Part shown: positions 2,458 through 55,159 of the stretch, piece by piece
Numbering within the stretch: position 1 is the first letter of the stretch
Layout of the letters: the number at the start of each line of letters is the position of its first letter
Virus record (IMG/VR): IMGVR_UViG_3300023174_000039
Location: 1-64,000 of that record
Length of the DNA stretch: 64,000 nucleotides
Direction: 5' to 3' (one strand)
Made by a program: the position numbers and the translations under genes
The notes under the pieces: model-generated
The model's input: the letters and a program-made list of their open reading frames with translations, nothing else
Databases searched by the model: none
What the model was told of the DNA's origin: nothing

Positions 2458-3831
2458 TTAACTCGATTTCTGCCCAGGTCGTGTGTCAGGGAACGGCTTG
2501 GGAGCCTTGCCCCCATTTTGATCACCATTGTCTGCACGTGGTTTAAGCAACTCGCTCAAGCTCTGACGACTTGGAATGTTGCCAAGATCTGTTGTTGGCA
2601 CAGTGTATGTATTGTTAACGAAGCTGGACCGTAAAGTATTGTTGTTAGGCCCGTTGTTGAGATCTGTTCGTACATTCTCGGCAATTTTGTGCCAACGCCG
2701 GCCATCATAACGGAACATGCGATTTGGAAAATAATCTAATCTCAAAGTATAATCTCCAGCCACTGCGTCTAGTGGAAAACTCACACCGGCAGTGACAGGC
2801 AAACCATTTGGTGCGTGTGCGTCGCCAGTTAGGTAACCCGAAGTCCAGCCAAATCCATCTGGAGTAACACTCATACCGCCTTGTGTGCCATCCACTGTGT
2901 CGCCATCTATTGTGCTCAGTGATGTGGGATTAGCAGGTTGTCCGTCCAACAGTGTGGGTACAACATACAACGGCTTGTTGTCGTAGCCAGATTTTGGCAC
3001 TTCCACGTCGGCTTGTGCAAGGATAGCATCATTGAGTTGGTAATCTTTTTCTCGTGTGCCCTGTTTGTCACTGATGGTAGGCGGAGTGTACTCACGCCAG
3101 TAATCGGTATTGGTAATCGGTGTACCAGCAGGTGTGTTGACCCGGGCTTGATAATACACGTCACCAGCATTGACAATAGCACCAGCAGGATAAAAATCAC
3201 TTGGATCCCAAATGTATTCAGCCACAAATGGTTTGTTGGTGATCGAGTTGTATTCTTGTGCATCAGTCAGTGGTGTGGCTTTCACACGCCACAAGTGTGG
3301 TAACCAAGTTTGACTGAAACCTTCACTTGCAAATGCCGCATCTTGCACCACATAGTATTTGGGCAATGATCTACTTAGATCCTTGTTCAGGGGATTGTAG
3401 TCTCGTAAGTTTGGGACTTCAAGCACATCGCCACTCATGAGTTTGCGACCAAATGTGTCAATCATGTCATTGTAGTGAAACGTGATAAACAGGGTATCGT
3501 TGTTCAAAAACAATCCAAACTGACTCAAATCAAAGTCGATGTCTTGTGCATTATAAACACCACGCATGACATACACATCATCGTCATACACGCGATCTCT
3601 GTTTTCCAGCAACAGCAAATCTTGTATGTTCATAGGGTTGAGCTCGTCGTAAACAGGTTGTGTGGCATCACCGTTGCCGCTGAGTACAGAATCTTCGCCG
3701 CCAGTTTGCGGTCCCAGGTACTTGTGGACAAAGAGGTCAAGGCCACCAACAGTGTATTGCTCACTGATTGTGCGGTCTAGAAATTGGTAATCTCTAGTGC
3801 GATTGGGGCGGTATAGGCTTAAACGTGGCAT
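2458..3831 (-). CDS. gp14: Neck/head-closure protein (T4 gp14-like)
   Basis: DLSQFGL and GDVLEVP motifs plus position before the gp15-like gene; start set at MPRLSLY (3831), 5 nt after TATAAATA. Confidence 0.65.
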   Translation of the reverse strand: MPRLSLYRPNRTRDYQFLDRTISEQYTVGGLDLFVHKYLGPQTGGEDSVLSGNGDATQPVYDELNPMNIQDLLLLENRDRVYDDDVYVMRGVYNAQDIDFDLSQFGLFLNNDTLFITFHYNDMIDTFGRKLMSGDVLEVPNLRDYNPLNKDLSRSLPKYYVVQDAAFASEGFSQTWLPHLWRVKATPLTDAQEYNSITNKPFVAEYIWDPSDFYPAGAIVNAGDVYYQARVNTPAGTPITNTDYWREYTPPTISDKQGTREKDYQLNDAILAQADVEVPKSGYDNKPLYVVPTLLDGQPANPTSLSTIDGDTVDGTQGGMSVTPDGFGWTSGYLTGDAHAPNGLPVTAGVSFPLDAVAGDYTLRLDYFPNRMFRYDGRRWHKIAENVRTDLNNGPNNNTLRSSFVNNTYTVPTTDLGNIPSRQSLSELLKPRADNGDQNGGKAPKPFPDTRPGQKSS

Positions 3832-47255: not shown

Positions 47256-47700
47256 TAAACTAAGCATTGCCAACGAAATGAAAATGTTTGACCACAAGGT
47301 TAGAGATTTCTACGACGAGTTAACAGACGAAGAGCGCAAAAAGTTTGCCCCATTCCTAATGATACGCTGGGGTAGTGCAGTAGAAGGCTCTAGAGACCTT
47401 CAAGAGTTTTATGTAATTTCCACAAACGAACGACTGAACAAAAACTTCTTTAACATCAGTTCATCTAAACATCGTAAACTGCAATGGCTAATGGCCACAA
47501 CTGTGAGTCCAGGCATGGGCTCGCTACGACACAACTGGATTGCACCCAAGAAAAAAGAAGCAGGGGCAGGTTCAATGAAAAAGCAATTGACCGAACTGTT
47601 CCCGCACTACAAGCCAGACGAAATAGATGTCATGGCAGCAATCACAACCAAAAAAGAACTTGACCAATACATTAGACAGCATGGACGAGACACCAAGTAA
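47248..47700 (+). CDS. Clamp loader small subunit-like protein (T4 gp62-like)
   Basis: KFAPFLMIRW, NERLN, LQWL and WIAPKKK resemble gp62. Confidence 0.55.
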   Translation: MTDKLSIANEMKMFDHKVRDFYDELTDEERKKFAPFLMIRWGSAVEGSRDLQEFYVISTNERLNKNFFNISSSKHRKLQWLMATTVSPGMGSLRHNWIAPKKKEAGAGSMKKQLTELFPHYKPDEIDVMAAITTKKELDQYIRQHGRDTK

Positions 47701-48370
47701 GTTTACCTGTGAGTTTTGTAAAAAAGAGTTTGCACGTGAAAGCTCCATTGCAGTACACATGTGCGAGCCCAAGCGCAGGCGCATGGAACAAAGTGAACGT
47801 GGGGTACAACTGGGCTTTCAAGCCTACATCAAGTTTTACGAACTGGCACAAGGTAGTGCCAAACTAAAAACATTTGAGGACTTTTGTGACTCACCTTACT
47901 ACCGAGCATTTGTCAAGTTTGGCCGCTATTGTGTAAACACACGAGTCATTAATCCTGCACAGTTTATGTCATGGTTATTGAAAAACAACAAGAAAATTGA
48001 CCACTGGTGCAGTGACAAAATCTACACTGAGTACTTGTTGTTTTATCTACGAGTAGAAGCTGTAGCAGATGCCCTGGCTCGTGCAATAGAGTACAGTATT
48101 GACTGGAGTGAAAAGACCACGCACCCTGCATATGATTGCATGCGTTATGGTAATATCAATTTGCTATGTCATGCTGTGACAACAGGACGTATATCGCCCT
48201 GGGTGATTTATAATTCAGCATCTGGACAAGAGTTCTTGAACAACCTGGACTCTTCTCAGATTGCAATGATCTGGCCCTACATTGATAGTGATGCGTGGCA
48301 AAAGAAATTCCATGACTACTCAGCGGATCAAGAGTATGCCAAAGAGATTTTGAGGCAAGCAGGATGGTGA
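47681..48370 (+). CDS. C2H2-like zinc finger-containing hypothetical protein
   Basis: FTCEFCKKEF....HMC at the N-terminus. Confidence 0.7.
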   Translation: MDETPSKFTCEFCKKEFARESSIAVHMCEPKRRRMEQSERGVQLGFQAYIKFYELAQGSAKLKTFEDFCDSPYYRAFVKFGRYCVNTRVINPAQFMSWLLKNNKKIDHWCSDKIYTEYLLFYLRVEAVADALARAIEYSIDWSEKTTHPAYDCMRYGNINLLCHAVTTGRISPWVIYNSASGQEFLNNLDSSQIAMIWPYIDSDAWQKKFHDYSADQEYAKEILRQAGW

Positions 48371-49866
48371 CTAGAAAACTTTGCCTTGGCAACAATACCG
48401 AACTTACTGATCAACAGACAAGAAAACTAGCAGCCGAGCAAGGCACAATTTGTCACGGGCTGTTGAGCGAGCTAGACGGTGAAATCGCAAACTACTCAGT
48501 TGACGGGTTTTATCATAGTAGCGTGTATGATATAATGCCAGGAAGATTGCGAGAAATTTGTTTAGATATTGGGCATGTAATAGTATTGCCGCAAACAAAG
48601 TCAGATTATCAAGATCCAGAATCATTTTATCAAACAGTTCAATTGTGTAAACAGCTAGAGACAACCATCACTGTGGAATGGTTAGATCCAGAAATTAAAA
48701 ATACAAATCAATTTTTTGAACAGCTGGTCAATACCAATAGCAGTTTTTGCATCTATCCCTTTATTGAGTTATTGGTACAGAATGGTTCTACTACTGTATG
48801 TTGTAGATCATCTAATCCGGTAACAGAACTAAGTCAACTGAAAGACTACGGAACTGATCCAGGGTACACTGCTATTAGAGATAAAATGTTACAAGGTGTA
48901 CGTGTTCCAGAACATTGTTCTGCATGCTATAAACTAGAAAATGTTGGGATCACGAGTCCCAGGAAACAAGAAACAATTGAATGGGCAAACAGATTAGGAC
49001 TCAATGGCCTAGAAGATTTGCAACAAATTACACAACCTGTGTATTACGAAATTAGACCAAGCAACATATGCAATTTGCAATGCAGGATGTGCTCTCCGAC
49101 TTACAGTCATCTTATTGATCAAGAATACCAACAGTTGGGATTATCGGCACCTATAAAGATCGACCACACTGGATTTGATATTGTGGATATCAACAATGTT
49201 AACAAACTCTATGTGGCTGGAGGAGAACCAATGGCCATGCCTGATTTTTATGAATTTGTAGACCAATGTATTGATACTCATAACACTGATTTTGAATTTG
49301 TTATAAACACAAATGGTACCAAGTTAAGCGATCGGTTTAAACGTCAACTACAGCACTTCTCTCGAATGCAGTTTATTGTAAGCATTGACGGGGCTGATCG
49401 ACTAAATCACTATATTAGATGGCCCAGTAACTGGAGCACAATAGTAGACAATGTCACTTACTTGGTCACAAACAATTACTATGTGACATTCAACGTTACT
49501 GTGAGCATGTACAATGTACTGGATTTAAATAATCTGTTTAGATTTTTTGAACAACATTGGCCGAGGCAGGCAGTGCATTTACAATTGGCGGGATCTCGAG
49601 ATGATTATCTGTCAGCATTTAACCACCCGTCAAGCGACTTGGTAGTACATATGTTGACACAATCTCAACAGACTGCCACCTATCGTGACAATGCATTGGT
49701 AGCAAACTTTGTTGACACAATGCTAGCCCATTACAAAAATAACCATCAATGTGATTTGGTAAAACTTAAAAAATTCTTTGAGATAAATGACAAGTTAGAT
49801 CAATCAAGGAACATATATCTTGAGGACTACTTGCCCGATCTGTCTAACGCCAGGAGCATGATATGA
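48364..49866 (+). CDS. Radical SAM protein, twitch-type, with extra N-terminal domain
   Basis: CIYPF..VCC..CSAC, CNLQCRMC and GGEPM. Confidence 0.9.
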   Translation: MVTRKLCLGNNTELTDQQTRKLAAEQGTICHGLLSELDGEIANYSVDGFYHSSVYDIMPGRLREICLDIGHVIVLPQTKSDYQDPESFYQTVQLCKQLETTITVEWLDPEIKNTNQFFEQLVNTNSSFCIYPFIELLVQNGSTTVCCRSSNPVTELSQLKDYGTDPGYTAIRDKMLQGVRVPEHCSACYKLENVGITSPRKQETIEWANRLGLNGLEDLQQITQPVYYEIRPSNICNLQCRMCSPTYSHLIDQEYQQLGLSAPIKIDHTGFDIVDINNVNKLYVAGGEPMAMPDFYEFVDQCIDTHNTDFEFVINTNGTKLSDRFKRQLQHFSRMQFIVSIDGADRLNHYIRWPSNWSTIVDNVTYLVTNNYYVTFNVTVSMYNVLDLNNLFRFFEQHWPRQAVHLQLAGSRDDYLSAFNHPSSDLVVHMLTQSQQTATYRDNALVANFVDTMLAHYKNNHQCDLVKLKKFFEINDKLDQSRNIYLEDYLPDLSNARSMI

Positions 49867-49877
49867 CTTCAAATAAG

Positions 49878-49907
49878 TTGACTAATAGTCATGGCCAAAT
49901 GTACAAT
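49878..49907 (+). promoter_or_regulatory. Sigma70-type promoter
   Basis: TTGACT-N18-TACAAT. Confidence 0.55.
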
Positions 49908-49929
49908 CTATGCTAAAGGACATAAAATT

Positions 49930-50280
49930 ATGATTAAAACAATCAACGCTGGAGCAGGAATTAGAATTCAGAATGGGTATACTTCTACAACTTATGTTAG
50001 TATGAGCAATTCCAGTGCTGGCATGGTTAGGTACAATGGAAATTCAAACAACATGGAAGTGTATGACGGATCATCGTGGTTGACACTAAACGCCGCATAC
50101 CCCATTGTAGAACTTGATGGTGATGTACTGGCTGTGGTAAACTGGGCCAAAGAAAAAATGAACAAAGAAGCCCGGATTCAAGAGTTAGCACAGCAAAATA
50201 AAACTGTAGCAGATGCATTAGAGGCTGTGGAAAAAGCACAACAGCAATTGGACATTGTTGCAAAGTTGGTCACTGTATGA
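49930..50280 (+). CDS. Hypothetical protein
   Basis: AAGGA RBS; [15 protein letters not shown] followed by a coiled coil. Confidence 0.7.
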
Positions 50281-50693
50281 GTACTTTTCACCAGTTCTTT
50301 GACGGTGTTGAGGAAAAAACAAAAGTATGTGGGATATGCTCAATAAAAAAACCACTTGGAAGTTTTGGCAACGATGGCGGAGCAAACTACAAAAGATACG
50401 AGTGCAAAGAATGTGCCCGAAAACAAGCCAAGATAATTGCTAAGATAAAAAAATCAGTGCAGAAGCCATCACATGATTATCGATGTCCAATATGCAATCG
50501 AACAGCTGATGAAGCACAAGGTCATAGCATAAAAAAGAAACAAGTTTGGTGCGCCGATCACGATCACGAAACAGGACAATTTAGAGGATGGTTGTGTCAT
50601 AAGTGCAATTTAGGGTTAGGAAACTTTGGGGATGATCGAAAGAGATTACAGGCTGCTGACAAATATTTGGAAAAACATGAGCGCGGACATTGA
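50277..50693 (+). CDS. Endonuclease VII-family nuclease (possible homing endonuclease)
   Basis: CPIC...[22 protein letters not shown] with additional N-terminal CxxC pairs. Confidence 0.9.
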
Positions 50694-51255
50694 CATTGAC
50701 TTTGCTGACAGAGATCTTGTGTTGAAGTTGATTCAGCATACTCCGGCACGACAATGGCACCAAGGACAAGTGCGCCGACACAATTCAGGAGTGTATGTTA
50801 CAGACATTCCGTACGATCCCATACACAACTGTGCGGCATTGGATTACGAAGAAGCTGAACAGCGTGGGTATTTTAAAATAGACTTTTTGAACATGGGTGT
50901 GTATCAGTTGGTCAAGAGCCCCGAACACTATGAACAGATGTTATCAGCTACTCCGCCTTGGGATAGACTTTGGCAAGATACAGAATGGGCTCGACAGTTG
51001 GTTCACGTGGGCAACTACACAGACCTGCTAAAGAACATGCGTCCTGCAACCATACCACAGATGGCAGCATTTATTTCAATTATTAGGCCTGGCAAAGCAC
51101 ACTTACAGAACCAGTCTTGGGCAGATGTGTTTGCAAGTGTATGGGACGGTGATGACTCACAGGGATACACGTTTAAAAAGTCACACAGTTTGTCTTATGC
51201 AATGTTGGTTGTGTTGCACATGAACTTGCTCAATCAAGACGCCGAACCAGTGTAA
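50677..51255 (+). CDS. Miniature DNA polymerase III alpha (DnaE)-like catalytic-core protein
   Basis: ADIDIDF, HNSGV, YFKIDFL, IIRPG and [12 protein letters not shown] correspond in order to DnaE PDIDIDF, HAAGV, KFDFL, RPG and YGFNKSHA. Confidence 0.8.
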
Positions 51256-51607
51256 TTGACTTGCGTTTGCTTTTCTTGCGAGATATATCCAGTAGACTGC
51301 AAGCAGGGCCATGTAATATTTCTAAATCTTTGTTGACAAAAGTGCGTAGTGTGTAGCGGAAAGGTTCCCACTCTGTGCGCAAAAATATGTTGATAGGAAT
51401 AGATCTGTTGCTCTCCCACCACCAGGTTGTGGCCAGCTCTAAGAATTTCATCTTGTTTTCCGGCAATAGTATGCTACCAAAGTCGTAGATAGTTGTGACT
51501 GTGTCGTCCCTGTTCTGTACAATGCCCACATACTCAGCGTTTGCATACACGCACAGCGTGATAAACGGATACTTTTCCGTCAGTTTGTCAAAGATATTGT
51601 TGCCCAT
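51230..51607 (-). CDS. Hypothetical protein
   Basis: 125-aa ORF filling the gap; basic C-terminus. Confidence 0.75.
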   Translation of the reverse strand: MGNNIFDKLTEKYPFITLCVYANAEYVGIVQNRDDTVTTIYDFGSILLPENKMKFLELATTWWWESNRSIPINIFLRTEWEPFRYTLRTFVNKDLEILHGPACSLLDISRKKSKRKSITLVRRLD

Positions 51608-51619
51608 AAATATTGTTCT

Positions 51620-52690
51620 ATGTATTCCACTACAGCATACTTATATCAGCAAATCACCAGAGTGTTATTGATTGACACCAGCGGTGGCTATTTCACAGCG
51701 AGGTACGATCCAGTGTACGCAAAACAACTAACAGTAAACAAAGGTGTTGACAACGTTCTACTCTTTGAATTTATCAATCAGGAACAAAAACCTGTAAACA
51801 TCACCGGCAGCACTTTTGTGTTCCGTATGATCAGCCAAAACGGCGATGTACTACTACTCAGCAAACGGATGGAAACACTCAGTGCCGCACTTGGCAGAGT
51901 CAAGGTAGTGCTAACAACTGAAGACACTATTGATTTAACAGCACAACCTGCCAGTTACAGTATCCAACGCACATCGGGTGATTATGTTCAAGCTGTGTAC
52001 ACAGATGCCAATTCGCAAGCTCGAGCAGACTGCAACATTGTGGATTCAATACTGCCCGAATTTCAAGACAGTGCCAATTTAACTATTCCCACAATTTATG
52101 GACCAAATGCATGGCCACAAAGTCCACCAAGTAGTTGGCCTGATTGGGCACTTACACCGCAGCCATTGAACGCCGCACATGCAACAGAATTTTATTCAAG
52201 CCAAATTCCCACACATGGTGCCAGCTTGACCACAATCAAAATGGATCTAACACATTACACAGGCACAATCAAAGCACAAGCCGCACAGGACTATGAAGCA
52301 CCATGGTATGATGTAACAGATTCAACACAGTACATGGATGCAACAGAAAGCATTTATCTTAATGTGGTTGGGTTCCATCCCTTGATACGTGTGGCATTTA
52401 ACCAAAGTCAAGGATGGGGCGCCACTGCCACTGCCACTGTGGTCAATGGAGTGGTCACAGGTATCACGGTCAACAACACCGGACAACGCTATATTGCCGC
52501 ACCAAATGTAATGATTATTGGCAACGGTGCAGGAGCCCGAGCAATAGGCAGCGTGGGGGCAGATGGCGGAATTGGTCCAATCACCGTGACTGATGGCGGC
52601 AACGGTTATCTACCTGTGACGTTTGGCAATCCGGTCTACGCTAGTGTTGTCATAAACAACGGCACTGTTACCAATTTGATGTATCGTTGA
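51620..52690 (+). CDS. Virion structural protein (baseplate/tail-associated)
   Basis: TAAATA 51607-51612; C-terminal VTGITVNNTGQRYIAAP and ITVTDGGNGY repeats typical of T4-like structural proteins. Confidence 0.65.
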   Translation: MYSTTAYLYQQITRVLLIDTSGGYFTARYDPVYAKQLTVNKGVDNVLLFEFINQEQKPVNITGSTFVFRMISQNGDVLLLSKRMETLSAALGRVKVVLTTEDTIDLTAQPASYSIQRTSGDYVQAVYTDANSQARADCNIVDSILPEFQDSANLTIPTIYGPNAWPQSPPSSWPDWALTPQPLNAAHATEFYSSQIPTHGASLTTIKMDLTHYTGTIKAQAAQDYEAPWYDVTDSTQYMDATESIYLNVVGFHPLIRVAFNQSQGWGATATATVVNGVVTGITVNNTGQRYIAAPNVMIIGNGAGARAIGSVGADGGIGPITVTDGGNGYLPVTFGNPVYASVVINNGTVTNLMYR

Positions 52691-52719
52691 TTGATCTTTG
52701 TTGAGCAATCTGTTATACT
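52691..52719 (+). promoter_or_regulatory. Sigma70-type promoter, probably leaderless
   Basis: TTGATC-N17-TATACT, 6 nt before the primase ATG. Confidence 0.65.
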
Positions 52720-52725
52720 ATACAG

Positions 52726-53709
52726 ATGCTAGACATTGTTTCCTACTTACCCGGCAAACGCAAACACACTCCATCTGGGTGGATCAGCTTCAATGCAGTT
52801 TGTTGCAGTCACAATGGGAATAGTCCAGACAAACGACAGCGTGGCGGACTCAAAGCAACAGAACAGGGTTGGAGTTATCACTGCTTTAACTGCGGATACA
52901 CCGCCAGCTTTATCCTTGGCCGCACTGTAAGCTTCAAAGCCCGCAGGCTCTTGAGTTGGATGGGTGTACCAGATGCTGAAATTGATCATCTCAATTTGGA
53001 AAGTTTGCGACACAGATCAATCAACGGCATATTAGAAGATCGACAAAAGATAGTCAATGTATTAAGTTCAATTGAGTTTGATGAACGAGACTTGCCGCCA
53101 TATGCTGAATTGTTGACTGATGAAGGCAATTACAGAGATTATGTGCGACGTCGTTGTGTGCCAGAAGACTTTCCTGTAATGGTACAGTTACATAACGATG
53201 GTATTCATTGGACACGCCCACATGTGATAATTCCATTTACCCATAATGATCAAGTTGTGGGTTATACATGTAGATTTCTCGACAACAAAACGCCTAAGTA
53301 CATATCCGACAGCCAACCTAACTATGTGTTTGGCACAGATCTACAAAACAAAGCCTGGGACCATGCGTTAGTAATGGAAGGTATCTTTGATGCACTCAGC
53401 ATCGGAGGTCTTGCCGTGATGCACAACACCATCAGCGATGGACAGGCTAGACTCATACGCAGTCTAGGAAAACAAATAACAGTAGTGCCAGACCAAGATG
53501 TGCCTGGCCTAGAACTAATTGATCGTGCTGTAGAACTAGGATGGGCTGTGAGCATACCCAACTGGCCCGCACACATTAAAGATGTAAATGATGCTGTGAT
53601 AGAGTTGGGTCGACTTGGCACCTTGCTGACTATTATGCAGGCTAGAGAAACAAGTCGAATCAAGATAGAAATAAGGAAGAAACAACTTGCTAAAAGAATA
53701 CGGACTTGA
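52726..53709 (+). CDS. gp61: DNA primase (T4 gp61-like)
   Basis: Zn finger CC..HCFNC and TOPRIM motifs EGIFDA, PDQD and KDVND. Confidence 0.92.
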   Translation: MLDIVSYLPGKRKHTPSGWISFNAVCCSHNGNSPDKRQRGGLKATEQGWSYHCFNCGYTASFILGRTVSFKARRLLSWMGVPDAEIDHLNLESLRHRSINGILEDRQKIVNVLSSIEFDERDLPPYAELLTDEGNYRDYVRRRCVPEDFPVMVQLHNDGIHWTRPHVIIPFTHNDQVVGYTCRFLDNKTPKYISDSQPNYVFGTDLQNKAWDHALVMEGIFDALSIGGLAVMHNTISDGQARLIRSLGKQITVVPDQDVPGLELIDRAVELGWAVSIPNWPAHIKDVNDAVIELGRLGTLLTIMQARETSRIKIEIRKKQLAKRIRT

Positions 53710-55159
53710 CGTCCAAAGACTATTTTTAGAGATGATGTTGGAAGATGCGTCTAGCTATGTGCGCATTCAAAATATCTACAACCCAGAGAACTTTGACAAG
53801 AGCTTGCGCAAAGCCGCAGAGTTTATTAAAGAACACTCAGACAAACACAAAACCATGCCTGACAGGTTGCAGATTAGTGCCACCACAGGAGTTAAACTGC
53901 AACCGGTGCCAGACTTAAACGAAGGTCACTATGACTGGTTCATGCAGGAGTTTGAATCATTTACCAAGCGTCAAGAACTTGAACGTGCTATCTTAAAGGC
54001 AGCAGACTTGCTGGAAAAGGGCGACTTTGATCCTGTGGAAAAACTCATCAAAGATGCTGTACAAATCTCACTTACCAAAGACATGGGCACAGACTACTTT
54101 GCTGATCCGGCTGCCAGGATCAACAAATATTTCAACTCAGGTGGGCAAGTATCAACAGGCTGGCCACAGATGGATCGATTGTTGTATGGTGGATTCTCAA
54201 GAGGAGAACTAAACATCTTTGCAGGTGGATCGGGTTCGGGCAAGAGCTTGGTCATGATGAACATTGCGTTAAACTGGTTACAGCAAGGACTAAGTGGTGT
54301 TTATATCTCACTAGAACTTTCAGAAGAACTCACAAGTTTGCGCACAGATGCCATGTTAACACAAACCAGTACCAAAGACATTCGAAAAGATATTGACACA
54401 ACCACAATGAAAGTCATACTGGTGGGCAAGAAGTCGGGAAATTATCAAGTTAAAGGATTACCGGCACAGAGCAATATCAATGATATTCGCGCTTATTTAA
54501 AAGAGTATCAAATTCAAACAGGCAAGAAAGTGGACTTTGTGATGATTGACTACTTGGATTTGTTGATGCCAGTAAGTGCTAAGGTCAGTCCCAACGACTT
54601 GTTTGTGAAAGACAAGTATGTGAGTGAGGAATTGCGCAACTTGTCCAAAGAACTGGGAGTGTTAATGGTCACCGCATCACAGTTGAATCGATCAGCTGTG
54701 GAAGAAGTTGTGTTTGATCACTCACACATTTCAGGTGGTATTTCCAAGATCAACACAGCAGACAATGTGTTTGGTATCTTTACCAGTCGGTCAATGAAAG
54801 AGCGTGGCAAGTATCAAATACAATGTATGAAATCACGTAGTTCAACAGGTGTGGGACAAAATATCGATCTGGAATACAACATTGAAACCATGCGTATTAC
54901 TGATGAGGGCGGTGACGAAGGAACTGGTTACAACAAACCACAGAGCAGTATCATGGACACAATCAAAGCACGTAGCCAAATAACCACTGTTGATAGTGAA
55001 AGTACCAAGTCTACCAAGTGGGAGAAGCCAACCGGTAAACACGCATGGGAATATCAAACTGGCAGTACAGATCAGAAATCAGACGATACAGAAAAAGTCA
55101 CAGCAGATGTGCAAAGTGCAAAACTTAAACAAATGCTTGCAGGTATTAAAAAGGGTTAG
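53687..55159 (+). CDS. gp41: Replicative DnaB-like helicase (T4 gp41-like)
   Basis: GGSGSGKS, SLELSE, IDYLDL, TASQLNR and KSR. Confidence 0.95.
   Translation: MLKEYGLDVQRLFLEMMLEDASSYVRIQNIYNPENFDKSLRKAAEFIKEHSDKHKTMPDRLQISATTGVKLQPVPDLNEGHYDWFMQEFESFTKRQELERAILKAADLLEKGDFDPVEKLIKDAVQISLTKDMGTDYFADPAARINKYFNSGGQVSTGWPQMDRLLYGGFSRGELNIFAGGSGSGKSLVMMNIALNWLQQGLSGVYISLELSEELTSLRTDAMLTQTSTKDIRKDIDTTTMKVILVGKKSGNYQVKGLPAQSNINDIRAYLKEYQIQTGKKVDFVMIDYLDLLMPVSAKVSPNDLFVKDKYVSEELRNLSKELGVLMVTASQLNRSAVEEVVFDHSHISGGISKINTADNVFGIFTSRSMKERGKYQIQCMKSRSSTGVGQNIDLEYNIETMRITDEGGDEGTGYNKPQSSIMDTIKARSQITTVDSESTKSTKWEKPTGKHAWEYQTGSTDQKSDDTEKVTADVQSAKLKQMLAGIKKG

What the first reader, a model, noticed from the sequence alone, without database searches (positions are those of the whole stretch)
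50677..51255. 192-aa miniature DnaE retaining the catalytic motifs
Bacterial DnaE is over 1000 aa. This ORF keeps the palm aspartates (DIDID and KID) and the RPG and FKKSH motifs in order, with the intervening regions deleted and no PHP, clamp-binding or OB domain. It is an intact ORF among T4-type replication genes, whose usual replicase is family B. It may be a minimal C-family nucleotidyltransferase with a new role (priming, repair, end or protein modification) or one part of a split enzyme.
Basis: partly seen in the sequence, partly recalled or inferred. Interest (0 to 1): 0.65.

Follow-up and report, generated by a model that had tools for sequence, protein, structure and literature searches.

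The report
C-terminal half of split mini-Pol III
The 192-aa ORF is real and conserved, but it is only one half of a two-gene, stripped-down relative of the bacterial replicative polymerase, a feature of T4-like jumbo phages published in 2021 and still untested at the bench.

Summary
It is not a self-contained miniature DnaE. It is the C-terminal unit (phrog_11778, E 1.9e-54) of the split minimal DNA polymerase III alpha that Iyer et al. 2021 (PMC7824862) described in group 2.2 jumbo phages. The missing N-terminal unit carries the GRGS nucleotide-binding motif. It is a 169-aa gene about 99 kb away in the same 331,654-bp phage record (G000:C1:150588-151097; PF07733 over cut-off). Structure models map the N unit onto E. 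coli Pol III alpha 271-393 and the C unit onto 399-781, so the two abut. A complex prediction scores 0.90 against a best control of 0.41. D4, D6, D8, K67, D69, R137, P138, K140, F166, K167 and H170 are invariant in 86 of 86 sequences, and dN/dS is about 0.06-0.10. Both units co-occur in about 92-96 cultured jumbo phages, always tens of kb apart, each in conserved synteny. The genome also has an intact family B polymerase and no other Pol III module. The role is inferred, most likely an accessory DNA polymerase. This is a new member of a published kind.

The parts
50677..51255 (+). C-terminal unit of the split minimal Pol III alpha, 192 aa. It holds the metal-binding palm strands and a reduced fingers module.
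   Evidence: phrog_11778 E 1.9e-54. AF2 model pLDDT 90.9. VIA-align: PolC 3f2b Z 9.7 (187 aligned, rmsd 3.6), Taq Pol III alpha 3e0d Z 9.3, M. tuberculosis DnaE1 5lew Z 9.0, E. coli 2hnh Z 7.8 (chain 399-781); the best unrelated chain scores Z 2.7.
50686..50700 (+). DIDID (D4, D6, D8). By established knowledge of E. coli Pol III alpha, D6 and D8 correspond to catalytic D401 and D403.
   Evidence: D4, D6 and D8 are invariant in 86/86 sequences. The motif aligns to MPDIDIDF of M. tuberculosis DnaE1. This strand touches strand 130-143 of the N unit in the complex model.
50875..50883 (+). KID (K67, D69), the third acidic residue of the palm, equivalent to E. coli D555.
   Evidence: K67 and D69 are invariant in 86/86. 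The profile aligns this motif to the K-M-D-F-L-G segment of DnaE1.
51085..51096 (+). RPGK finger motif (R137, P138, G139, K140).
   Evidence: R137, P138 and K140 are invariant in 86/86; G139 is kept in 83/86. The motif aligns to YRPG of DnaE1 and to PF17657 positions 53-83.
51172..51186 (+). FKKSH finger motif, followed by a hydrophobic helix (residues 168-185).
   Evidence: F166, K167 and H170 are invariant in 86/86. The motif aligns to YAFNKSHA of DnaE1. Residues 167-180 lie in the predicted interface with the N unit.
47627..48370 (+). Conserved upstream neighbour, 247 aa, phrog_11058, function unknown. It directly precedes the C unit in most relatives.
   Evidence: Present in 77/77 relatives that have enough upstream DNA, and in Phosso, PA5oct, Atu_ph07, GAP32 and XaC1.
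48364..50693 (+). Lineage-variable inserted cassette, not part of the enzyme. It holds a radical-SAM protein (48364-49866), a 129-aa ORF (49891-50280) and an endonuclease VII-type nuclease (50277-50693, overlapping the C unit by 17 nt).
   Evidence: PF04055 E 3.7e-10 and PF02945 E 9.3e-15. The cassette is absent from the closest relative L005. Among 77 relatives the endonuclease is present in 4 and the radical-SAM gene in 1-2.
51230..51607 (-). Conserved downstream neighbour on the opposite strand, 125 aa, phrog_11637, function unknown.
   Evidence: phrog_11637 E 5.8e-29. It is found next to the C unit in all 85 related loci, including the five cultured phages.
52726..55159 (+). Primase (52726-53709) and DnaB-like replicative helicase (53687-55159). 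They close the conserved replication module that contains the C unit.
   Evidence: The same order (helicase, small genes, C unit, reverse gene, structural protein, primase, DnaB) is annotated in GAP32 and XaC1, with Phosso, PA5oct and Atu_ph07 showing the part downstream of the C unit.

Best explanation
The ORF encodes the C-terminal unit of a two-gene, minimal C-family (Pol III alpha-like) nucleotidyltransferase that is conserved in T4-like 'group 2.2' jumbo phages. This unit supplies the three metal-binding aspartates (D6, D8, D69), the triphosphate-contacting lysine next to the third aspartate, and a cut-down fingers module. A separate 169-aa protein, encoded about 99 kb away at G000:C1:150588-151097, supplies the first part of the palm with the G-x-G-R-G-S nucleotide-binding motif. 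The two proteins assemble non-covalently. The GS-motif strand of the N unit pairs with the DIDID strand of the C unit and rebuilds a Pol-beta-like active site. No intein or other joining sequence is present. Shown here: the homology, the fold, the complementary boundaries, co-occurrence, purifying selection and a predicted interface. Inferred: the heterodimer is catalytically active. It lacks the thumb, the PHP domain, the clamp-binding domain and a proofreader, so it would act as a low-processivity accessory DNA polymerase (repair, gap filling or primer extension) beside the phage's family B replicase.
For: The C unit matches phrog_11778 at E 1.9e-54. The N unit matches phrog_11127 at E 3.8e-41 and PF07733 at 35.3 bits against a cut-off of 23.9.

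The structure models abut. N-unit residues 58-169 align to E. coli alpha 270/271-393 (Z 8.8-9.6) and to DnaE1 304-413 (Z 10.6). C-unit residues 1-190 align to E. coli 399-781 (Z 7.8) and to PolC 970-1295 (Z 9.7).

The complex prediction gives ipSAE 0.90 in three runs against a best control of 0.41. This mark was reached by 58 of 80 solved complexes and 2 of 110 mismatched pairs. The runs share at least 96% of contacts and partner pLDDT is at least 89. N 133-135 touches C 7-9.

The catalytic and finger residues are invariant in 86/86 sequences, and the N-unit GxGRGS motif is invariant in 15/15. dN/dS is 0.06-0.10.

Both units occur in 96 and 92 phage records with the same host spectrum, 31-182 kb apart. 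They occur in 6 of 6 near-complete IMG/VR records tested.

Both units keep their own synteny. The genome has a family B polymerase in an uninterrupted 896-aa frame. It has no PHP, HhH beta-binding domain, epsilon-type exonuclease or beta clamp.

The same conclusion was published by Iyer et al. 2021.
Against: No biochemical or genetic test of any member was found in the held literature, so activity and role are inferred.

The complex score may reflect the model's memory of intact Pol III alpha. It shows compatibility, not binding.

Without a thumb or a duplex-binding domain, stable primer-template binding is doubtful, so templated synthesis may need unknown partners.

No RNA run holds the locus, so co-expression of the halves is unknown.

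Sequence-only matches to cellular DnaE are weak: Pfam E 0.093, NCBIfam 12.3 bits against a 434-bit cut-off, and PDB profile E 0.0016.
Confidence: 0.8

Rival explanations
1. The 192-aa protein is a self-sufficient miniature polymerase or nucleotidyltransferase that works without the other gene.
For: It carries all three acidic residues and the finger motifs. It folds confidently on its own, with pLDDT 90.9.
Against: It begins at the DxD strand. It therefore lacks the preceding GS-motif strand and helix that every Pol-beta-like nucleotidyltransferase uses to hold the triphosphate. That element is invariant on the partner gene. The partner is present in all 6 near-complete related genomes checked. 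The predicted interface buries residues 2-10, the DIDID strand.
Confidence: 0.04
2. The heterodimer is an active nucleotidyltransferase but not a templated DNA polymerase. It could be a terminal transferase, a primer or end modifier, a protein- or DNA-nucleotidylating enzyme, or a maker of a nucleotide signal used in phage-host conflict.
For: The thumb, the duplex-binding HhH domain, the clamp-binding region and a proofreader are all absent. The Pol-beta-like fold supports many non-polymerase chemistries (established knowledge). The phage already has a complete family B replicase.
Against: The parts retained beyond the palm are the finger motifs (RPGK, FKKSH), which align to the finger region of Pol III alpha. 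The C unit sits in a conserved replication module with primase and helicase.
Confidence: 0.13
3. It is a catalytically dead relic kept as a structural or regulatory subunit of the replisome.
For: The enzyme is extremely reduced, and no activity has ever been shown.
Against: Every catalytic residue is invariant across 86 sequences that diverge down to 35% identity. dN/dS is about 0.1. None of the 85 homologues is decayed; the three apparent internal stops are simply earlier natural stops in the variable tail.
Confidence: 0.03

Closest known systems
Split minimal DNA polymerase III alpha of group 2.2 jumbo phages (Iyer, Anantharaman, Krishnan, Burroughs and Aravind 2021, Viruses 13:63, PMC7824862); PHROGs phrog_11778 (C unit) and phrog_11127 (N unit)
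   Same: It has the same two-gene architecture, the same split point and the same motifs. It shows the same co-occurrence with a family B polymerase and the same absence of other Pol III domains. It keeps the same synteny as in GAP32, PA5oct, Atu_ph07, XaC1 and Phosso.
   Different: It differs only in lineage. This is an uncultured lake or freshwater phage whose C unit is 35-44% identical to those of cultured phages. The halves are farther apart (about 99 kb) than in Rak2-like phages (31-34 kb). A variable radical-SAM and endonuclease VII cassette lies directly upstream.
Bacterial Pol III alpha (DnaE) and PolC, the C-family replicative polymerases
   Same: It shares the Pol-beta-like palm with the GS motif, DxD and the third Asp, the finger motifs in the same order, and the fold (Z 7.8-10.6).
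   Different: The phage enzyme is 169 + 192 aa on two polypeptides, against more than 1,000 aa on one. It has no PHP, thumb, HhH beta-binding, OB or tau-binding parts. About 100 residues are missing at the thumb position, and about 87 within the fingers. It falls far below the curated family cut-offs.
Cyanobacterial split-intein DnaE (DnaE-n and DnaE-c)
   Same: This is also a C-family polymerase encoded by two distant genes.
   Different: In cyanobacteria the halves carry split-intein pieces and are ligated into one full-length chain, and the split lies in the fingers (my own knowledge). Here the break lies inside the palm, between the GS motif and the DxD. There is no room for intein sequence: the N unit ends at the equivalent of E. 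coli 393 and the C unit starts at 399. Assembly must therefore be non-covalent.
Full-length, PHP-bearing Pol III alpha of group 3.2 jumbo phages such as phage G, and PHP-less phage DnaE-like proteins (phrog_405, phrog_11165, phrog_12219)
   Same: They are phage-encoded C-family polymerases. Weak profile matches fall at the same motifs.
   Different: Those are single chains of about 780-1,190 aa, close to host enzymes, and serve as the main replicase. The present one is minimal, split, and accompanies a family B replicase.

Membership tests
Split minimal Pol III alpha of group 2.2 jumbo phages, C-terminal unit (phrog_11778) | Full-length sequence match to the family profile | tested here: met
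   E 1.9e-54; residues 3-187 match profile positions 7-193 of 197.
Split minimal Pol III alpha of group 2.2 jumbo phages, C-terminal unit (phrog_11778) | A separate N-terminal NTP-binding unit encoded by a distant gene in the same genome | tested here: met
   G000:C1:150588-151097, 169 aa. phrog_11127 E 3.8e-41 and PF07733 35.3 bits (cut-off 23.9). It lies about 99 kb from the C unit.
Split minimal Pol III alpha of group 2.2 jumbo phages, C-terminal unit (phrog_11778) | Mg-binding acidic residues and template/dNTP-binding finger motifs conserved | tested here: met
   D4, D6, D8, K67, D69, R137, P138, K140, F166, K167 and H170 are invariant in 86/86 sequences.
Split minimal Pol III alpha of group 2.2 jumbo phages, C-terminal unit (phrog_11778) | Host genome is a T4-like jumbo phage with a family B polymerase and no other Pol III domains | tested here: met
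   The virus record is 331,654 bp. A PolB hit lies in an 896-aa open frame. There is no PHP, HHH_6, RNase_T or beta clamp.
Split minimal Pol III alpha of group 2.2 jumbo phages, C-terminal unit (phrog_11778) | The two units reconstitute one enzyme | tested here: inconclusive
   The structural boundaries abut. The complex score is 0.90 against a best control of 0.41; the mark was reached by 58 of 80 solved complexes and 2 of 110 mismatched pairs. This is a prediction only, with no binding or activity data.
Bacterial DnaE / Pol III alpha (TIGR00594, NF004226, Pfam PF07733+PF17657+PF02811+PF14579) | Score over the curated family cut-offs | tested here: not met
   TIGR00594 scores 12.3 bits against 434, NF004226 scores 11 against 1002, and PF17657 scores 12.5 against 22.
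Bacterial DnaE / Pol III alpha (TIGR00594, NF004226, Pfam PF07733+PF17657+PF02811+PF14579) | PHP domain, thumb, HhH beta-binding domain and OB domain on one chain | tested here: not met
   The protein is 192 aa, all aligned to palm and fingers. No PHP or HHH_6 occurs anywhere in the genome.
Bacterial DnaE / Pol III alpha (TIGR00594, NF004226, Pfam PF07733+PF17657+PF02811+PF14579) | C-family palm and fingers fold | tested here: met
   VIA-align Z 7.8-9.7 over 171-188 residues, with only C-family polymerases above Z 6.1; the next chain scores 2.7.
Bacterial DnaE / Pol III alpha (TIGR00594, NF004226, Pfam PF07733+PF17657+PF02811+PF14579) | Template-directed DNA polymerase activity | not testable with these tools
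   This needs a primer-extension assay of the co-expressed halves.
Pol-beta-like nucleotidyltransferase superfamily | hG[GS] motif plus DxD plus a third acidic residue in one catalytic core | tested here: not met
   The ORF alone has DxD (D6, D8) and D69 but no GS motif. The GS motif (G137-R-G-S140) is on the partner protein. The full set exists only in the heterodimer.
Split-intein DnaE (cyanobacterial type) | Intein halves flanking the split | tested here: not met
   All N units end at EFL[RK]-stop, and C units start 3-17 residues before DIDID. The structural boundaries are E. coli 393 and 399, which leaves no intein-sized sequence.

The most novel reading that the evidence does not exclude
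The heterodimer might not be a conventional templated polymerase. It could be a nucleotidyltransferase with its own task in the jumbo-phage replisome, for example extending or modifying primers next to the adjacent primase and helicase. It could also be a living example of the smallest catalytic core from which C-family replicases were built. Either would make the origin and minimal requirements of bacterial-type replicases directly testable. The idea of an ancestral-like minimal core was already raised in 2021, so only a new activity would be new.
Probability: 0.13. Interest if true: 0.7.

Novelty: new member of a known kind. Interest (0 to 1): 0.3.

Why it matters
A 361-residue, two-chain version of the bacterial replicase core would be the smallest known C-family polymerase. 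It would serve as a natural experiment in fragment complementation across an active site. It bears on how Pol III-type enzymes arose, and on why T4-like jumbo phages carry a second polymerase type beside their family B replicase. This copy adds nothing in kind to the 2021 description. It does add three points. The family is very abundant in freshwater metagenomes, with at least 7,993 related proteins. The catalytic residues are invariant in all 86 sequences sampled, under strong purifying selection. Structure prediction supports the abutting boundaries and the docking of the halves. The open questions are experimental, and can be addressed more easily in cultured relatives such as PA5oct, GAP32 and RaK2.

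Tried and rejected
- **Single-sequence searches.** Pfam, NCBIfam and PDB searches gave only sub-threshold DnaE hits. The relation needed the PHROG profile, a family profile and structure comparison.
- **Foldseek on the N unit alone.** It gave only weak E-values (0.1), although all top hits were Pol III alphas. VIA-align resolved it.
- **Pattern search for N-unit relatives.** It found only 6 loci. Further N units were obtained by searching the genomes that hold C units.
- **Apparent decay.** Internal stops in 3 homologues proved to be an artefact of my ORF extraction running past earlier natural stops. I reject decay.
- **Split intein or covalent joining.** I reject this because no extra sequence lies at the junction.
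- **'Putative membrane protein'.** This annotation appears in GAP32-like records. I reject it because the hydrophobic helix 168-185 is the conserved finger helix and lies in the predicted interface.
- **Expression.** No RNA run holds the locus, and laid contigs cannot show transcription.
- **Promoter and terminator scan.** Counts were not above shuffled expectation.
- **Supplements.** The supplementary tables of the 2021 paper are not held, so accession-level identity with its examples could not be checked. The match rests on the description and on the named phages.
- **Later literature.** I found no experimental follow-up.
- **Search not run.** I did not run the large representative-protein search for unsplit or cellular versions of the mini enzyme. 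It was flagged as costly, and no claim here rests on absence.

Full report
**Observation.** The ORF at window 50677-51255 (+) reads through as 192 aa. A TTG at 50626 would give 209 aa, but the ATG at 50677 is the supported start. Most homologues begin with the same MSADIDIDF. In run X3, a natural variant has the stop of the upstream conserved gene lying directly against this ATG. An independent freshwater study holds identical contigs over 50016-50966 and 51160-52959, so the sequence is not an assembly artefact.

**What it is.** Direct Pfam and NCBIfam scans give only faint hits to the Pol III alpha finger region. A single-sequence PDB search gives nothing significant.

The PHROG library places the protein, over its full length, in phrog_11778 'DNA polymerase' at E 1.9e-54. 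tblastn finds full-length relatives of 35-44% identity in 96 phage records, all jumbo phages: Phosso, the PA5oct group, Atu_ph07 and the RaK2/GAP32/121Q group. They are annotated variously as hypothetical, 'putative membrane protein', 'DNA polymerase' or 'DnaE-like'.

A profile of 13 members hits M. tuberculosis DnaE1 at E 0.0016. The hit has four collinear pieces: DIDIDF, K-x-D-F-L, RPG and F-x-K-S-H.

An AlphaFold2 model built from 33 sequences has pLDDT 90.9. Its top 16 Foldseek matches are all C-family polymerases. VIA-align covers 171-188 of the 192 residues:

| Structure | Z | Detail |
|---|---|---|
| PolC 3f2b | 9.7 | rmsd 3.6, 187 aligned |
| Taq Pol III alpha 3e0d | 9.3 | |
| M. tuberculosis DnaE1 5lew | 9.0 | |
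| E. coli 2hnh | 7.8 | chain 399-781 |
| Best unrelated chain | 2.7 | |

About 380 residues of E. coli alpha are thus compressed into 190. The profile alignment places the losses at the thumb position (about 100 residues) and inside the fingers (about 87 residues).

**The other half.** A search of the phage's own 331,654-bp record with PF07733 found one more hit, in a small ORF at G000:C1:150588-151097 (+). This ORF is outside the window.

This 169-aa protein matches phrog_11127 (E 3.8e-41) and PF07733 above its cut-off. It carries an invariant G-x-G-R-G-S motif and ends, in all 15 sequences aligned, at E-F-L-[RK]-stop.

Its model aligns over residues 58-169 with E. coli alpha 270/271-393 (Z 8.8-9.6) and with DnaE1 304-413 (Z 10.6). 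The N unit therefore stops at the equivalent of E. coli residue 393, and the C unit starts at 399. The break lies inside the Pol-beta-like palm, between the GS nucleotide-binding element and the DxD strand.

No intein-sized sequence is present at the break, so any assembly must be non-covalent.

A complex prediction of the two proteins scored 0.90 in three runs against a best control of 0.41. That mark was reached by 58 of 80 solved complexes and 2 of 110 mismatched pairs. The runs agreed in at least 96% of contacts, and partner pLDDT was at least 89. N-unit residues 133-135 lie against C-unit residues 7-9. The tool warns that this may reflect memory of intact Pol III alpha. I take it as evidence of compatibility, not of binding.

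**Conservation and distribution.**
- D4, D6, D8, K67, D69, R137, P138, K140, F166, K167, H170 and Y174 are invariant in 86 of 86 sequences.
- Pairwise dN/dS among close environmental relatives is about 0.06-0.10.
- No decayed copy was seen. Three apparent internal stops were earlier natural stops.
- The N unit is found in 92 phage records, with the same host spectrum as the 96 that hold the C unit.
- The two genes lie 31-34 kb apart in RaK2-like phages, 44 kb in PA5oct, 182 kb in Atu_ph07 and about 99 kb here.
- All six near-complete IMG/VR records that I tested hold both units.
- The family is abundant, with at least 7,993 related proteins in the metagenome protein collection. This phage comes from lake or freshwater samples.

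**Synteny.** Each unit keeps its own gene neighbourhood. The C unit lies in a replication module with this order: UvsW-like helicase, small conserved genes, C unit, a reverse-strand phrog_11637 gene, a structural protein, primase, DnaB-like helicase. The N unit lies two genes upstream of a GroES-like co-chaperonin. The split is therefore ancestral to this whole phage group.

**Rest of the genome.** A family B polymerase hit lies in an uninterrupted 896-aa frame near 191.7-193 kb. No PHP domain, HhH beta-binding domain, epsilon-type exonuclease or beta clamp was found. The only other finger-domain hit is the ORF itself. The mini enzyme consists of these two pieces only.

**Comparison with what is known.** Iyer et al. 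2021 (PMC7824862) described exactly this. [quoted passage not shown] That version is split into an N-terminal NTP-binding protein and a C-terminal Mg- and template-binding protein, encoded by distant genes. The authors proposed that it cooperates with the family B enzyme in synthesis of one strand or in repair.

I found no later experimental work in the held library. The finding is thus a new, uncultured freshwater member of a published kind.

**Mechanism.** These points are shown:
- the homology and the fold;
- the complementary boundaries of the two units;
- their co-occurrence;
- purifying selection;
- a predicted interface.

These points are inferred:
- The heterodimer rebuilds an active Pol-beta-like site.
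- Because the finger motifs are the parts retained beyond the palm, it performs DNA synthesis.
- Without a thumb, a clamp-binding region or a proofreader, that synthesis would have low processivity. It would be an accessory role such as repair, gap filling or primer extension.

A non-polymerase nucleotidyl-transfer role cannot be excluded. A self-sufficient C unit or a dead relic are both unlikely.

**Verdict.** The 'split enzyme' reading is supported and the 'stand-alone miniature DnaE' reading is not. Novelty is low because the system is published, but the biology remains experimentally open.

Noticed in passing
window 48364-50693: A 2.3-kb variable cassette lies between the conserved phrog_11058 gene and the C unit. 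It holds a 500-aa radical-SAM protein, a 129-aa ORF and an endonuclease VII-type nuclease that overlaps the C unit start by 17 nt. The closest relative (L005) lacks it entirely. Among 77 relatives the nuclease is present in 4, the radical-SAM gene in 1-2 and the 129-aa ORF in 33. Run X3 shows the cassette-less junction exactly at 50677. This looks like an insertion hotspot, possibly seeded by a free-standing homing-type nuclease.
   Followed up: partly
G000:C1:150588-151097 (outside the window; L001:1213-1722): The first 57 residues of the N unit have no counterpart in Pol III alpha. They are poorly conserved and modelled with low confidence, yet they are predicted to touch the C unit (residues 1-32). 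Their role is unknown.
   Followed up: partly
window 51178-51231 (residues 168-185 of the ORF): This is a hydrophobic C-terminal helix. It probably explains the 'putative membrane protein, 1 TM' annotations of homologues in GAP32, CBB and Erwinia phages. In the model it is the conserved finger helix, and it lies in the interface with the N unit.
   Followed up: yes
L087:2986-3561 (Agrobacterium phage Atu_ph07, FDI40_gp074): The RefSeq CDS starts at locus position 3067, downstream of the DIDID motif. The homology starts at 3001, and an in-frame start lies at 2986. The annotated start therefore seems to cut off the catalytic aspartates.
   Followed up: partly
L011-L013, L028, L031, L047, L059, L063, L065, L068: In these relatives, about 0.7-1.1 kb of extra DNA lies between the C unit and the reverse-strand phrog_11637 gene. 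This is a second variable spot beside the gene.
   Followed up: no
L086:3556-3585 (PA5oct gp264 tail): The PA5oct homologue ends in an acidic tail followed by DPFKLFS. From my own memory, this resembles clamp-binding tails of T4-type polymerases. The tail is not conserved in the window's protein, which ends NQDAEPV, or in other groups.
   Followed up: no
window 1-64000: No tRNA or tmRNA gene, and no Rfam family at gathering score, occurs anywhere in the window.
   Followed up: yes
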